A stretch of DNA of 63,934 nt, filler included, from Octopus bimaculoides (GCF_001194135.2; 4 parts of 3 records of this genome joined end to end with filler, not necessarily neighbours in it), one strand, 5' to 3'. Counted from the first letter of the whole stretch, positions 38,901-50,644 are shown. Made by a program: numbers and translations. Notes: a model not told the origin generated them from the sequence alone.

Positions 38901-40528
38901 GGCATATCTTTTCTCTCCTTTCTTTCAACGTGAACGCTCCTCTGTAACATTGTTGCGTGACTCACAATGTTCATGGACGAATTGTTTGAGATAGTTTGTG
39001 TAAAGCTTGTATACTGTTTAAGAAAGCAATAGGTCTATATTTTACTGCCAACTAGGATGTTTCATTCTTGGCTACAAACCAATTTGCTATTTCAGTTCGA
39101 ATTTTCATTGTTCTTTTGACTGAATATATTAATGGCTTTCTCACGAAGGTCAGTTTTTTTTGTATGCAAGTGATCGGCATAATTGTCCAGGAAAACGTTA
39201 AAAAGGCATTCTTAAACTGTCGTCTGCGCCTGCACGTCTGATATTGATGGCACCATGTAGCATGTATATATGTATGTATCTGTATGTTTATATGCTTGTA
39301 AGCATGTAGTATGTGTGTGTTTAGCATGTGTGAGCATGTAATATATGTGTATGCCTGAAATGCATGTGTGTGGGTGTAGTGCCTGAGTGTTTCTGAACAT
39401 TTGAGTTGAGTTAGTGTTTATATCGATAGAGTAAAACTGATATCACAAACAAAAGCAATATGGCAAACTTGGATCGATGAAAGACACATTTACTCTTGCT
39501 ACAGGCACAATGTCTACCCCTCGCTCGTGATTAAGCATTACCTGCCTGAAACATAAAATATTTTCGCGTGTGAAGCAAATTAAAAATATTCCTTCGTGCA
39601 TAAAAGCGCGCACACACACACACTCCTCCGCACATATACACATATATGCGTACTCATATAATATATATATGTATGTATGTATGTATGTATATATATATAC
39701 ATATATATATACATATACGCATACATATGTATAACATATGTACATATACACATTCACGTATATATATTCATATACACATACACGTATATATATATATATA
39801 TACATTTGTATATATATACATGACATACATGTATTGTATATATATATATAAATACACACAATATAAGATGTATCTAAATCCATGCATACACATATATATG
39901 AAAATATTTGCTTAGTTATATAATGCTATTGCGCTGTACACAAGTGTTGATTGTTCTGTGTTGCGTAACACAATAAATTATATAATCTAATAAAAAAATT
40001 ATGAATTTATTCATATATTTATGCATTCACAGTGACGTAGTTAAAGACTTGTAGACAACGTGTCGCGCATATTAACATTACGAAATACTTTTCGCTTTAT
40101 CCTTTCTCTTTCTCTTTCTCTCTTTCTTTCTCCACACACATGCACGCACGCACTCACATATCCCTAGGTATTGATTTCTATTTTATATACTGTTGTACAC
40201 AAATAAAAGTGACATTAAAGCATTAATAGAGCAAGTGCAGATCCAGCGTATAAAATTTGTGCGTGTAAATTTTATATTCTTCATACGCACTTGCACAATG
40301 TATATACATATAATGTTATCCTTTTACTATCTTCAACACAAGGGAGTCAGCCTTTATAGAGCTTCATATAATTATCTATCTCTCTATGTATGTATGTATG
40401 TATGTATGTATGTATGTATGTATATATATGTATATATATATATATTGATAGAAAGGACAACAAAAGAAAGAAAGAGACCTCGATATTATGTAAATAGAGG
40501 AATTTATCTGTAAAAATATGTGACTCGG

Positions 40529-40602
40529 TAGCCATGATAAAACTCCGAGTTTCGGATGCCGGGGTGGGAACCCACGCCAACATCTCTTCAGTTGTCCGGC
40601 TA
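40529..40602 (-). ncRNA. Type-I hammerhead ribozyme (left arm)
   Basis: Minus strand: TAGCC-G-GACAA-CTGAAGA-GATGTTGG-C-GTGG-GTTC-CCAC-C-CCGGCATC-C-GAA-ACT-CGG-AGT-T-TTATC-AT-GGCTA. Core, 8+4-bp stem II, 3-bp stem III and stem I (one mismatch) are all present. Confidence 0.75.
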
Positions 40603-40853
40603 TTGAAAATTCCTGGGAAAAATGACCGTTAAACAAAGGGAAATTACTGTGTGGTTGACCGTTATTAAGGCAAAAGATCTATAGACCCTTAAGTAAGGGG
40701 AGGGGGTAAACGCAATGGAACACTATAGACTCTTTTACTCCCTTACTTTTACCCACCCCTTACTTAGGGGTCTATAGCTCTTTTGTCTTAATAACGGTCA
40801 ACCACACAGTAATTTCCCTTTGTTTAACGGTCATTTTTCACAGGAATTTTCAA

Positions 40854-40927
40854 TGGCCGGATAACTGAAGAGATGTTGGCGTGGGTTCCCACCCCGACAT
40901 TCGAAACTCGGAGTTTTATCATGGCTA
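40854..40927 (+). ncRNA. Type-I hammerhead ribozyme (right arm)
   Basis: CTGAAGA at 40865-40871 and GAAA at 40903-40906. Stem I GATAA/TTATC (40860-64/40916-20) extends with TGGCC/GGCTA; stem III ACT/AGT; long stem II; predicted cleavage 3' of U40915 (GUU). Confidence 0.78.
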
Positions 40928-40949
40928 CCGAATAAGTGTCACATATTTT

Positions 40950-41001
<52 letters not shown>

Positions 41002-41738
41002 CATACATACACAAGCTCACATCCATATGCAAGTACATGCAAATTTACATATCAGTTTGTCACACGAACCGAAAGTGGCTGACAGTCATATTCAGGCACA
41101 TCCTACCATAAATCTTCACATGTTATCAGCGATCATAAAGGAAAGAGAGAATAAATCGCGTTTCTTTCTGTATTTACGTACGACCGTACATCTATTATCA
41201 TGTCATATATTTACATTCTCGTTATAGCTCCTATTATAAATATGCAAAATTTTCCTAACCGTCTTACAGTCATATATGGGAATCCAAATACCAAATTATG
41301 TATAATTCGGCACTTGGTTTCTCATATTCACTATATAATTAACACCTACTCACATGTTCCATAATAATTTAATGTGACTGAATTGAATATCGCGCAGTAA
41401 TTCCTCCAGCAATGGCATGAGAGTGAAGATATACCATGACGATATTTGAATATAAAGCTGTACGATTTTCGTACACTAATACTATAAAAGATTTGCCAAC
41501 TTACCCCTTACAAATTCCATGTTTACGAACCAATAATTTCTGCGCTTATTTACACGTGTGTGTGTGTATGTGTCTGTGTGTATGTGTGTGCGCGTGTGTG
41601 AGTATATAGGTTTGTATTTAATCGGATGTAAAGTGAAAAATTTCTTCCTTTCACCTCTCTCTCTCTTTTTATCTACATACACGTAGAGTGTTCTCTTTCT
41701 ACTGCCCTTCTCACTAAATCTATATCTATATCTAAACA

Positions 41739-42049
41739 TGGAGGCGCAATGGCCCAGTGGTTAGGGAAGCGGACTCGCGGTCGGAGGATCGTTGTTTCGA
41801 TTCTCAGAGCGGGCGTTGTGTGTGTTTATTGAGCGAAAACACCTAAAGCTCCACGAGACTCCGGCAGCGGGTGGTGGCGACTCCTGTTGTACTCTTTCGG
41901 CCCCAACTTTCTCTCACTCTTCATATTTTTTGAGTAACGCTGCGATGGACTGGTGTCCCGTTCAGCTGGGAGGTGGGAACATCCACCATAGAAACCGGGA
42001 AACAGGGCCCATGAGCCTAGCTAGGCTTTTAAAGGGCGCATAAAAAGAA
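41739..42049 (+). mobile_element. SINE family B variant (same head, different 3' half) with 11-bp TSD
   Basis: First ~175 nt match 59976-60160, then diverge to gtaacgctgcgatggactggtgtcccgttcag...; atatctaaa(c/t)a at 41728-41738 and 42050-42060. Confidence 0.88.
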
Positions 42050-49445: not shown

Positions 49446-49672
49446 TCCATGGTTAGAGAGTCGGGCTTACAATCATTAGGTAGTGAGTTCGATTCCCGGA
49501 CCGGGCTGTGTGATGTGTTCTTCAGCAAGACACTATTTTACGTTGGTCCAGTTCACTCAGCTGCAGAAATGAGTTCCGACGTCACTAGTCCCAAGCTGTA
49601 TCGGACTTTACCTTTCCCTTGGATAACATCAGTGGTGAGGAGAGGGGATGATGCTGTGCATGGGTGACTGGG
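49446..49672 (+). mobile_element. SINE family D, tRNA-derived
   Basis: ccatggttagagagtcgggc...gagttcgattcccggacc (A/B-box-like), then cagcaagacact...ccagttcactcagctgcagaaatgag; homologous to 51646-51859. Confidence 0.85.
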
Positions 49673-49679
49673 GAATAAA

Positions 49680-50644
49680 TTGGGTGGGGAAAATCTATGT
49701 TCCTTGAGCTTCTGGAACATCATTAGTGAAATGTGTGGTCGAGCATCGTCATGAAGAATGACTGGCCCTCTTCAGCTGGGACGGAGGAGTAGCTGTTTTT
49801 CGTTCGTTTTAGCAATTTCGTGGCAATATGTTTCTGAAGTGATGGTTTTTCTGGGTTTTAAGAAGTTGTAGTGGATGAGTCCAGTAGTACACCACCAAAC
49901 AGTTACTATAACCTTCTTTTTGAAGAGCTCGGATTTAGGAAATGTTTTCGGTGCTTCATTTTGCAAAGAACGTTTTTTTTTTATTATTGTACAGAATCCA
50001 CTTTTTATCGCAACTTACAATACGGTCGAGAAATCGGTCTGGATACGGAAAAGAAGTGACGAGCAAATTTCATATCTGCGCATCTTCTGATTTTCGTTCG
50101 AATCGTGTGACACGCATTTGTCGAGGTATTTGGATTTTCCGATTGCATGCAAATAGATGCAGGCAGTTTTCTGGCTAAATTGAAGTTCTTTTGCCTGTTT
50201 TCGAGTGGTTTTATGTGGATCTTTCTCCATGATGGTCTTTAATTGACAGTCATCGATGACACATAGATTCCACAATGTTCACGATCTACAAAGCTCAGGT
50301 CTCCACTGCGAAATCGTTTAAACCATTTTCGAGCTGATCACTCATTGGTCGTTTCCTCAGCAAATTTTTCGTTGATACTGCGGGCTGTTTCAGCTGCTTG
50401 CCGTCCTTTTTTTAAAGTTCAATAGCAAAATTGCTCGAATATCGCACTTTGACAAGTCCATTTTAGATGATTGTTAGAACCGCGAAAAAAATATCAATGT
50501 TATTCTATTGATGCATTTGGGCAAGTTTATGTCTGTATTATTACACAATTGCGAAAAAATGTTTAAGAAATTCAAAACTCTACAAAAATTCGCTACAGAT
50601 TCTTCATGATTCAAAACGTTGCTTACTTGTTACTCAATCTGATA
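49680..50644 (-). mobile_element. Decayed mariner (Hsmar1-like DD34D) element: 5' TIR and most of the transposase
   Basis: ATG at 50461: MDLSKCDIRAILLLNFKK/GRQAAETARSINEKF, KWFKRFRSGD, KVIVTVWW, TITSETYC, GPVILHDDARPH. TIR-like tatcagattgagtaacaagtaagcaacgttttga at 50611-50644. Truncated before the third catalytic Asp. Confidence 0.9.

What the first reader, a model, noticed from the sequence alone, without database searches (positions are those of the whole stretch)
40509..40953. Palindromic element carrying two outward-facing hammerhead ribozymes, one per strand
Seen in sequence: ~200-bp inverted arms around a 37-bp spacer. Each arm holds a complete type-I hammerhead: CUGAAGA core, long stem II (GATGTTGG/CCGGCATC plus GTGG-GTTC-CCAC), GAAA, 3-bp stem III (ACT-CGG-AGT) and a 5-bp stem I extended across an internal loop (consensus TAGCC-G-GATAA / TTATC-AT-GGCTA). 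Established knowledge: hammerheads occur in Penelope pLTRs and in retrozymes, but retrozymes carry them in direct repeats. Inference: an ORF-less inverted-dimer element in which either strand can be transcribed into a self-cleaving RNA could be an undescribed ribozyme-bearing foldback family, for example an inverted Penelope pLTR dimer or a retrozyme-like element targeting (TA)n.
Basis: partly seen in the sequence, partly recalled or inferred. Interest (0 to 1): 0.9.

Follow-up and report, generated by a model that had tools for sequence, protein, structure and literature searches.

The report
Inverted pair of truncated Penelope-like retroelement ends
The palindrome and its hammerhead ribozyme motifs are real, but they look like a dead, head-to-head pair of truncated Penelope-like retrotransposon ends inserted into a (TA)n microsatellite, which is a documented insertion form rather than a new kind of element.

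Summary
Bases 40509-40953 form a palindrome, with 180-nt gapless arms that are 95% complementary. Each arm carries, facing outward, a type-I hammerhead with a complete catalytic core.

The right-arm copy passes a structural descriptor (helices I/II/III = 5/8/3 bp). Chance would give about 0.005 such hits per Mb. It is also the only Rfam family matched, but far below threshold (RF00163, 15.3 bits against a gathering score of 34). The left-arm copy has an A·C mismatch in helix I and gets no Rfam match.

The anatomy fits published Penelope-like elements (PLEs):
- PLE-type ribozyme: long helix II, short helix I, unpaired base at the foot of helix II, tiny helix III.
- The ribozyme lies near the 3' end of each arm.
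- An ATG sits at the base of helix II, as in Poseidon.
- (TA)n lies directly outside both ends.
- A 63-nt extension is present at one end only.
- The two copies are 5'-truncated and joined head-to-head.

The piece contains no reverse transcriptase or GIY-YIG gene, and no other copy could be found in any collection. Family membership is therefore inferred from anatomy, not shown by homology. I rate it a new member of a known kind, of low-to-moderate interest.

The parts
40385..40445 (.). Left flank: compound microsatellite (TATG)n(TA)n, which ends directly at the insertion
   Evidence: TRF row 40385-40445, period 4; sequence; outward-reading alignment
40446..40508 (-). 63-nt unique extension present only outside the left arm; candidate PLE 'tail' (a longer 3' end of the left copy)
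   Evidence: Absent from the right side in the arm alignment. Unique in the piece. The frame opened by the ATG at 40583 stays open through it. The literature describes a one-sided tail of 30-40 bp. Assigning this stretch to the element is inference.
40509..40713 (-). Left arm: a 5'-truncated copy of the ribozyme-bearing terminal region, read outward on the minus strand
   Evidence: the repeat finder I1; blastn of the arm against the piece, 92.5% over 199 nt; gapped alignment
40527..40603 (-). Left-arm hammerhead motif: C3 at 40591, predicted cleavage after 40541, core intact, helix I weakened by an A·C mismatch
   Evidence: Sequence and pair list. It fails the descriptor requirement of at least 4 contiguous helix I pairs. 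No Rfam hammerhead match.
40714..40742 (.). Asymmetric central junction between the two truncated 5' ends; it contains a partial third copy of an arm motif (CTATAGACTCTT)
   Evidence: Alignment; direct repeat 40679-40690 / 40723-40734
40743..40953 (+). Right arm: a 5'-truncated copy of the same terminal region, read outward on the plus strand; it has a 6-nt insertion (ATAAGT, 40932-40937)
40853..40929 (+). Right-arm type-I hammerhead: helix I 5 bp, then an internal loop, then 5 bp; CUGAAGA at 40865-40871; helix II 8 bp with one bulge, a C·C mismatch, 4 more bp and a GUUC loop; GAAA; helix III ACU-CGG-AGU; U17 at 40915
   Evidence: Descriptor hit; false-positive rate; RF00163 at 15.3 bits, 40859-40921; helices I and II appear in the MFE/centroid folds
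40873..40875 (+). ATG at the base of helix II (its left-arm equivalent is 40583-40581 on the minus strand). It opens the frame MLAWVPTP..ETRSF... reading outward
   Evidence: It starts 8 nt after C3, against 6 nt in Poseidon PAc, and both frames read GAA-ACN through the core. On its own this is weak: 10.8% of ATGs in the piece have at least 46 open codons, and no homologue was found.
40954..41009 (.). Right flank: (TA)n(TACA)n microsatellite abutting the right arm
   Evidence: TRF row 40953-41009

Best explanation
Bases 40446-40953 are a dead, ORF-less retrotransposon insertion. It consists of two severely 5'-truncated copies of the ribozyme-bearing terminal (pLTR) region of a Penelope-like element, or of a pLTR-derived non-autonomous relative, joined head-to-head with their 3' ends facing outward.

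Proposed mechanism (inferred from published PLE biochemistry, not shown at this locus):
1. The PLE RT/GIY-YIG protein cut both strands of the (TA)n core of a (TATG)n(TA)n(TACA)n microsatellite.
2. Reverse transcription of element RNA was primed on each cut strand, starting at internal sites a short way downstream of the hammerhead.
3. One copy started 63 nt further out than the other, which produced the one-sided extension.
4. The two cDNAs stopped after about 200-270 nt and were joined in the middle.

Each arm therefore keeps the element's own type-I hammerhead in the sense orientation. The two ribozymes are relics of the element's RNA and do not form a designed pair. They lie on opposite strands and cannot form the dimeric hammerhead proposed for metazoan PLE ribozymes. 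A read-through transcript would instead fold into a ~210-bp hairpin, at most a possible small-RNA precursor.
For: Shown here:
- Palindrome with diverged arms (9 substitutions plus a 6-nt indel) and an asymmetric centre.
- A hammerhead far beyond chance in the right arm, with RF00163 as the only Rfam family matched.
- The ribozyme lies 38 nt (right) and 33 or 95 nt (left, without or with the extension) from the outer ends.
- (TA)n lies immediately outside both ends once the extension is counted.
- No target-site duplication at the palindrome's own ends.
- A 63-nt extension at one end only.
- An ATG at the base of helix II with an outward frame that is open for 46 codons in the left copy.

Matched to the literature:
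- PLE ribozymes have helix II of 7-8 bp, helix I of 4-5 bp, an unpaired base at the foot of helix II and a small helix III (PMC4209133).
- PLEs carry the hammerhead near the 3' end, are highly 5'-truncated, often have an inverted 5'-truncated copy adjacent, prefer (TA)n, and have a tail at one end (PMC8557442).
- The Poseidon protein cleaves and extends both strands, RT starts internally at two sites which generates the tail, and the ORF starts at the base of helix II (PMC11167929).
- Animal retrozymes derive from PLE pLTRs (bioRxiv 10.64898/2026.07.22.740005).
Against: - No reverse transcriptase or GIY-YIG coding remnant in the Pfam scan of the piece's stop-to-stop segments of at least 45 aa that passed a low-complexity filter.
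- No second copy in the piece.
- No related DNA or protein found in any collection searched, so homology to a full-length PLE was never shown.
- The hammerhead is well below Rfam's gathering score, and the left copy does not match at all.
- The extension is 63 nt, not the 30-40 bp described for PLE tails.
- Helix III (ACUCGGAGU) is only nearly palindromic: a dimer would have a central G·G mismatch.
- The ribozyme is no better conserved between the arms (4 of 77 positions differ) than the rest of the arms (5 of about 125).
- The open frame alone is weak evidence.
- The source organism is unidentified.
Confidence: 0.6

Rival explanations
1. A single solo copy of the ribozyme-bearing element inserted here and was later duplicated in inverted orientation at the DNA level, for example by replication template switching or fold-back repair in this hairpin-prone microsatellite. 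The palindrome would then be a secondary rearrangement, not a product of retrotransposition on both strands.
For: The outward flanks are also mirror-symmetric: (TA)n then (TACA)n on both sides, 59 nt at 90% complementarity (pair I9). The region is full of palindromic compound microsatellites, for example 39661-39800, which has no insertion.
Against: The two outer ends differ: a 63-nt extension on one side only and a 6-nt indel. A DNA-level inverted duplication that included the flanks should copy both ends alike. The same mirror-symmetric microsatellite arrangement occurs nearby without any insertion, so symmetric flanks are expected in this DNA anyway. A published PLE mechanism already explains inverted pairs.
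Confidence: 0.15
2. The palindrome is the unit of transposition. It would be a self-standing foldback or MITE-like family whose arms each encode a hammerhead.
For: The element is compact (445 bp), ORF-less and has perfect terminal inverted repeats by construction. No PLE coding sequence is nearby.
Against: There is no target-site duplication at the palindrome boundaries. The centre is asymmetric and the outer ends are unequal. There is no other copy in 22 kb. Every feature has a counterpart in described PLE insertions. The two ribozymes cannot cooperate, and the hairpin would out-compete the ribozyme fold.
Confidence: 0.1
3. The hammerhead-like motif is a chance match inside an ordinary inverted repeat or hairpin-RNA locus, and no ribozyme is involved.
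For: No Rfam gathering-level hit. The hammerhead fold is not the MFE structure in the single-arm transcript, z = -0.98. The only other Rfam matches on the hairpin are generic sub-threshold miRNA-precursor models.
Against: A descriptor hit of this quality is expected about 1e-4 times in 22 kb. None of 38 chance matches to core plus helix III in public contigs formed helices I and II. RF00163 is the only family matched out of 4227, and it matches in the correct register. The architecture also matches PLE-type peculiarities that the descriptor did not require.
Confidence: 0.04

Closest known systems
Canonical endonuclease-positive Penelope-like elements (Penelope/Poseidon, Neptune and related clades): their pLTR and 3'-terminal region, and their inverted, 5'-truncated insertion forms
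   Same: - A type-I hammerhead near the 3' end, in the sense orientation.
- PLE-type ribozyme shape: long helix II, short helix I, an unpaired base at the foot of helix II, minimal helix III.
- An ATG at the base of helix II, as in Poseidon from Anolis.
- Extreme 5' truncation and a head-to-head inverted partner.
- An AT-rich (TA)n target and a one-sided terminal extension.
   Different: - No RT/GIY-YIG ORF at this locus, and no demonstrated homology to a full-length element.
- Helix II is unusually long: 8 bp, a C·C mismatch, then 4 more bp.
- Helix III has 3 bp and a non-palindromic triloop.
- The extension is 63 nt rather than 30-40 bp.
- Both copies are truncated down to about the pLTR, so the result is a compact 445-bp palindrome.
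Metazoan non-LTR retrozymes (Cervera and de la Pena 2020, PMC7229834)
   Same: Small (about 200 bp per unit), AT-rich, ORF-less units carrying a type-I hammerhead. They are reported to be related to PLE pLTRs.
   Different: Retrozymes are direct tandem repeats, from dimers to multimers, that yield circular RNAs. They carry canonical hammerheads with helix I of 6 bp, helix II of 4 bp and loop-loop contacts. Here the two units are inverted, so no transcript carries two sense ribozymes, and the ribozyme is of the atypical PLE kind.
Rfam RF00163 Hammerhead_1 (type I)
   Same: The complete catalytic core and the three-helix topology. The full-length model aligns to 40859-40921.
   Different: The score is 15.3 bits against a gathering score of 34. 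Helix II spans 27 nt where the model expects 10. The left-arm copy does not match.
Foldback elements and MITEs (DNA transposons)
   Same: A short, ORF-less palindrome that folds into a long hairpin.
   Different: No target-site duplication at the palindrome ends, unequal ends, an asymmetric centre, and arms whose content looks like a retroelement terminus.

Membership tests
Penelope-like element (PLE) insertion | An ORF encoding a PLE-type reverse transcriptase with a GIY-YIG endonuclease, or demonstrable homology of the fragment to such an element | tested here: not met
   Pfam scans of the stop-to-stop segments of at least 45 aa that passed a low-complexity filter, across the whole piece, found only a mariner transposase domain.
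Penelope-like element (PLE) insertion | A hammerhead motif in the terminal repeat, near the 3' end, in the sense orientation | tested here: met
   Predicted cleavage sites lie 38 nt (right) and 33 or 95 nt (left) from the outer ends, with both motifs reading outward.
Penelope-like element (PLE) insertion | PLE-type ribozyme architecture: helix II of 6-8 bp, helix I of 4-5 bp, an unpaired base at the foot of helix II, and a small palindromic helix III that implies action as a dimer | tested here: met
   Helix II is 8 bp with one unpaired base beside the closing pair, helix I is 5 bp, and helix III is 3 bp with a triloop, compared with PMC4209133. Caveat: ACUCGGAGU is only nearly palindromic, with a central G·G mismatch in a dimer.
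Penelope-like element (PLE) insertion | 5' truncation with an inverted 5'-truncated copy abutting, so that the 3' ends face outward | tested here: met
   Two arms of about 205-211 nt (about 268 nt for the left copy if the 63-nt extension is counted) meet head-to-head at an asymmetric junction of about 29 nt. This form is described in PMC8557442.
Penelope-like element (PLE) insertion | Insertion into AT-rich or (TA)n DNA | tested here: met
   (TA)n lies directly outside 40446 and 40953. A target-site duplication cannot be resolved inside the microsatellite.
Penelope-like element (PLE) insertion | An optional 30-40 bp 'tail' at one end, produced by two alternative RT start sites | tested here: inconclusive
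   There is a one-sided 63-nt extension at 40446-40508, unique in the piece. The position is right but the length is not, and other copies are needed to decide.
Penelope-like element (PLE) insertion | The ORF starts at the base of helix II (shown for Poseidon PAc) | tested here: inconclusive
   The ATG starts 8 nt after C3, against 6 nt in PAc, and both frames read GAA-ACN. The frame is open for 46 codons in the left copy. However, 10.8% of ATGs in the piece do as well, and the peptide has no homologue.
Hammerhead ribozyme, type I | Conserved core (C3 U4 G5 A6 N7 G8 A9, G12 A13 A14, A15.1-U16.1, H17) at a three-helix junction with helix I open | tested here: met
   The core is present in both arms. 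The right arm passes the descriptor. The left arm has one A·C mismatch in helix I.
Hammerhead ribozyme, type I | A score at or above the Rfam RF00163 gathering threshold | tested here: not met
   No hits at gathering score. The right arm scores 15.3 bits against 34. The left arm gets no match.
Hammerhead ribozyme, type I | Covariation of the helices among copies, and self-cleavage | not testable with these tools
   Only two copies exist here. Three differences fall in paired positions: two keep pairing through transitions and one breaks it. No cleavage assay is possible.
Metazoan non-LTR retrozyme | Two or more direct tandem repeats of 150-450 bp, each with a hammerhead | tested here: not met
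   The two units are inverted, not direct, and there are no further copies in the piece.
Metazoan non-LTR retrozyme | A canonical type-I hammerhead with helix I of 6 bp, helix II of 4 bp and loop 1-loop 2 contacts | tested here: not met
   Helix II is 8+4 bp and helix I is 5 bp followed by an internal loop, compared with the definitions.
Foldback / MITE DNA transposon | A target-site duplication flanking the terminal inverted repeats | tested here: not met
   No direct repeat flanks 40509-40953. Only a trivial 2-nt AT appears if the boundary is shifted by one base.

The most novel reading that the evidence does not exclude
The palindrome itself is the mobile unit. It would be a ribozyme-bearing foldback family, possibly derived from PLE pLTRs, that spreads as an inverted dimer. 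Its outward transcripts would self-cleave and its read-through hairpin would feed small-RNA pathways.
Probability: 0.08. Interest if true: 0.7.

Novelty: new member of a known kind. Interest (0 to 1): 0.25.

Why it matters
As an instance of a described PLE insertion form, it matters mainly for annotation. PLE-type hammerheads with a long helix II fall far below Rfam's threshold, so such loci are missed or mislabelled as foldback elements or MITEs.

The locus is also a clean, compact example of the inverted pair that would be expected if a PLE protein primes reverse transcription on both strands of an AT-rich target, with two different 3' ends side by side.

If the minority reading were true (a foldback family that carries ribozymes), it would be a new class of self-cleaving mobile element.

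Tried and rejected
- **Rfam.** Gathering scores on the whole piece gave nothing. E<=10 on 551 nt gave only generic hairpin and low-complexity matches, with no hammerhead.
- **Exact and degenerate DNA patterns** in the metagenome, GTDB genome and viral contig collections. The strict helix II pattern gave 0 hits. The looser pattern (core, gap, GAAA plus helix III) gave 17 and 21 hits in prokaryote-like contigs and 0 viral. None folds as a hammerhead or resembles the element, so they are chance matches.
- **Six-frame concatenated translation of the element** against 5.8 billion proteins, meant to catch spurious ORFs called on other copies: no hit.
- **Exact look-up of two window ORFs** to find the source assembly: not on record.
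- **Organism identification** through the mariner and retroelement remnants: only 39-43% identical mariner relatives, some named as Hydra.
- **The 46-aa peptide from the helix II ATG** against 1.84 billion representative proteins: no hit.
- **Literature string searches** for the ribozyme and the SINE head: none found. Supplements of the two key papers are not held.
- **ARAGORN:** no tRNA genes.
- **Rejected ideas.** An assembly artefact, because the arms differ at 9 positions plus indels and sit in unique flanks. A retrozyme, because the repeats are not direct. A cis-dimeric hammerhead, because the two copies are on opposite strands.

Full report
**Context.** The piece (28332-50659) is 35% G+C and dense in (TA)n, (TATG)n, (TG)n and (TC)n microsatellites. 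It has no long ORFs and no tRNA or Rfam gathering-level hits. Its only Pfam domain is a decayed mariner transposase (PF01359, E = 2.4e-15). This is animal-type nuclear DNA. The organism could not be identified. A tRNA-derived SINE-like head at about 41740 reminded me of cephalopod SINEs, but that is memory, not a test.

**The observation.** The repeat finder reports arms 40525-40704 and 40752-40931: 180 nt, 95% complementary, 47 nt apart. A gapped alignment of the two arms read outward extends them to 40509 and 40953 on the outside and to about 40713 / 40743 on the inside. That leaves an asymmetric centre of about 29 nt containing a partial third copy of an arm motif. The arms differ by 9 substitutions and a 6-nt indel, so the palindrome is genomic and not a technical artefact. 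No other copy exists in the 22-kb piece. The whole element folds into one hairpin of -355.8 kcal/mol.

**The ribozyme motif.**
- Both arms carry, reading outward, CUGAAGA, a long helix II, GAAA, a 3-bp helix III (ACU-CGG-AGU), U17, and a helix I of 5 bp extended by 5 more pairs across a 1x2 internal loop. Helix II is G-C, one unpaired base, 7 bp, a C·C mismatch, 4 bp and a GUUC loop.
- A descriptor I wrote (core, helices I/II/III, one bulge allowed in helix II) finds exactly one hit in the piece, the right-arm copy, with 5/8/3 bp.
- In 400 Mb of simulated sequence of the same composition, hits of that quality occurred once, about 0.005 per Mb of double-stranded genome. The loosest descriptor gave about 1 hit per Mb.
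- The left-arm copy fails because a C replaces U in helix I, giving an A·C mismatch.
- Rfam is much less favourable. There is nothing at gathering score and nothing at E<=10 on 551 nt. The alignment places 27 nt where the model's helix II has 10. The left arm gives no hammerhead match.
- The explicit hammerhead fold is worth -21.1 kcal/mol (right) and -16.6 kcal/mol (left), against MFEs of -27.4 and -26.1. In a 225-nt single-arm transcript helix II forms, but helix I is out-competed.
- Of the four arm-to-arm differences inside the ribozyme, two keep pairing through transitions, one lies in the bulge and one breaks helix I. The ribozyme (4 of 77 positions) is no better conserved than the rest of the arm (5 of about 125).
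- Conclusion: the motif is a real hammerhead sequence motif, probably intact in one arm. There is no sign that it has been maintained at this locus.

- Read outward, the right arm runs straight into (TA)n(TACA)n at 40954. The left arm is followed first by 63 unique nucleotides (40446-40508) and only then by the mirror-image (TA)n(TACA)n. With that extension counted, the insertion sits in the (TA)n core of a (TATG)n(TA)n(TACA)n compound microsatellite. A similar mirror-symmetric microsatellite lies at 39661-39800 without any insertion.
- No target-site duplication flanks the palindrome proper. Inside (TA)n none can be resolved.
- Helix II begins G-AUG. That ATG (40873, or 40583 on the minus strand) opens a frame, MLAWVPTP(A/T)(S/F)ETRSFIMATE..., that reads outward. 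In the left copy it stays open for 46 codons, through the extension and into the microsatellite. In the right copy the in-frame 6-nt insertion supplies a TAA stop.

**Comparison with what is known.**
[quoted passage not shown] They are thought to act as dimers, with low activity in vitro. [quoted passage not shown]
- Craig et al. 2021 (PMC8557442) state that PLE insertions are highly 5'-truncated. [quoted passage not shown] A 30-40-bp tail is often present at only one end. Hammerheads lie near the 3' ends, and (TA)n is a preferred target.
- The Poseidon study (PMC11167929) reports three relevant things. The purified protein cleaves and extends both target strands at AT-rich sites. Reverse transcription starts at two internal sites, 111-118 nt into the ORF and further on, which generates the tail. 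[quoted passage not shown] In the printed template the ATG starts 6 nt after C3 and the frame reads GAA-ACG through the core. Here the ATG starts 8 nt after C3 and the frame reads GAA-ACU.
- Metazoan retrozymes, by contrast, are direct tandem repeats with canonical hammerheads (PMC7229834). A 2026 preprint derives them from PLE pLTRs.

**Interpretation.** Every structural feature of the locus has a described PLE counterpart. The most economical account is a double, head-to-head, abortive retrotransposition of a PLE or of a pLTR-only derivative into (TA)n. The palindrome is a by-product of priming on both strands. The two ribozymes are on opposite strands, so they cannot form a dimeric hammerhead, and read-through RNA would be a long hairpin.

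This reading is anatomical. I could not show homology to a full-length PLE, because no related sequence was retrievable from any collection:
- DNA patterns: (the 38 pattern matches are chance).
- Six-frame translation of the element.
- The N-terminal peptide.

The extension is also longer than the published tail, and the open frame alone is weak evidence, since 10.8% of ATGs in this DNA do as well. I put the PLE-type reading at about 0.6.

**Rivals.**
- A later DNA-level inverted duplication of a solo copy (0.15). It is favoured by the symmetric flanks and disfavoured by the unequal ends.
- A genuine foldback family that carries ribozymes (0.1). It is disfavoured by the lack of a target-site duplication, the asymmetric centre and the unequal ends.
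- A chance motif (0.04). It is disfavoured by the false-positive rate and by the PLE-specific details.

**Verdict.** I rate it a new member of a known kind, with interest 0.25. The decisive step is a copy census in the source genome.

Noticed in passing
window 41740-42040 (+): A G+C-richer patch (about 52%) beginning GGAGGCGCAATGGCCCAGTGGTTAGGG...GTTTCGATTC, with A-box and B-box-like motifs. It is probably a tRNA-derived SINE. ARAGORN and Rfam do not call it. From memory it resembles cephalopod SINEs, which would hint at the source organism, but this is unverified.
   Followed up: partly
window 49556-50278 (-): A decayed mariner/Tc1-type transposase spread over three reading frames (PF01359, E = 2.4e-15). 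The closest proteins found are only 39-43% identical; those with a name are 'SETMAR-like' from Hydra.
   Followed up: partly
window 34242-34991 (+): Several consecutive stop-to-stop segments that look by eye like the C-terminal part of a retroelement ORF (for example ...ILIWDTKEKSYVIIEVSCRADMN...). There is no Pfam hit and no homologue at E<=1e-5, so their identity is unknown.
   Followed up: partly
window 39656-39854: A mirror-symmetric compound microsatellite, (TA)n(TGTA)n(TA)n...(TACA)-like, that is itself an imperfect palindrome and carries no insertion. It shows that symmetric microsatellite flanks are normal in this DNA.
   Followed up: partly
window ~32740-32880: A run of 135 N (an assembly gap) flanked by (TG)n/(CA)n microsatellites.
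   Followed up: no
window 40873-40935 (+) and 40583-40446 (-): The ATG at the foot of hammerhead helix II opens the frame MLAWVPTP..ETRSFIMATE. The right copy is closed by an in-frame 6-nt insertion carrying TAA, while the left copy stays open for 46 codons. This could be the start of the parent element's ORF, but no homologue was found.
   Followed up: yes
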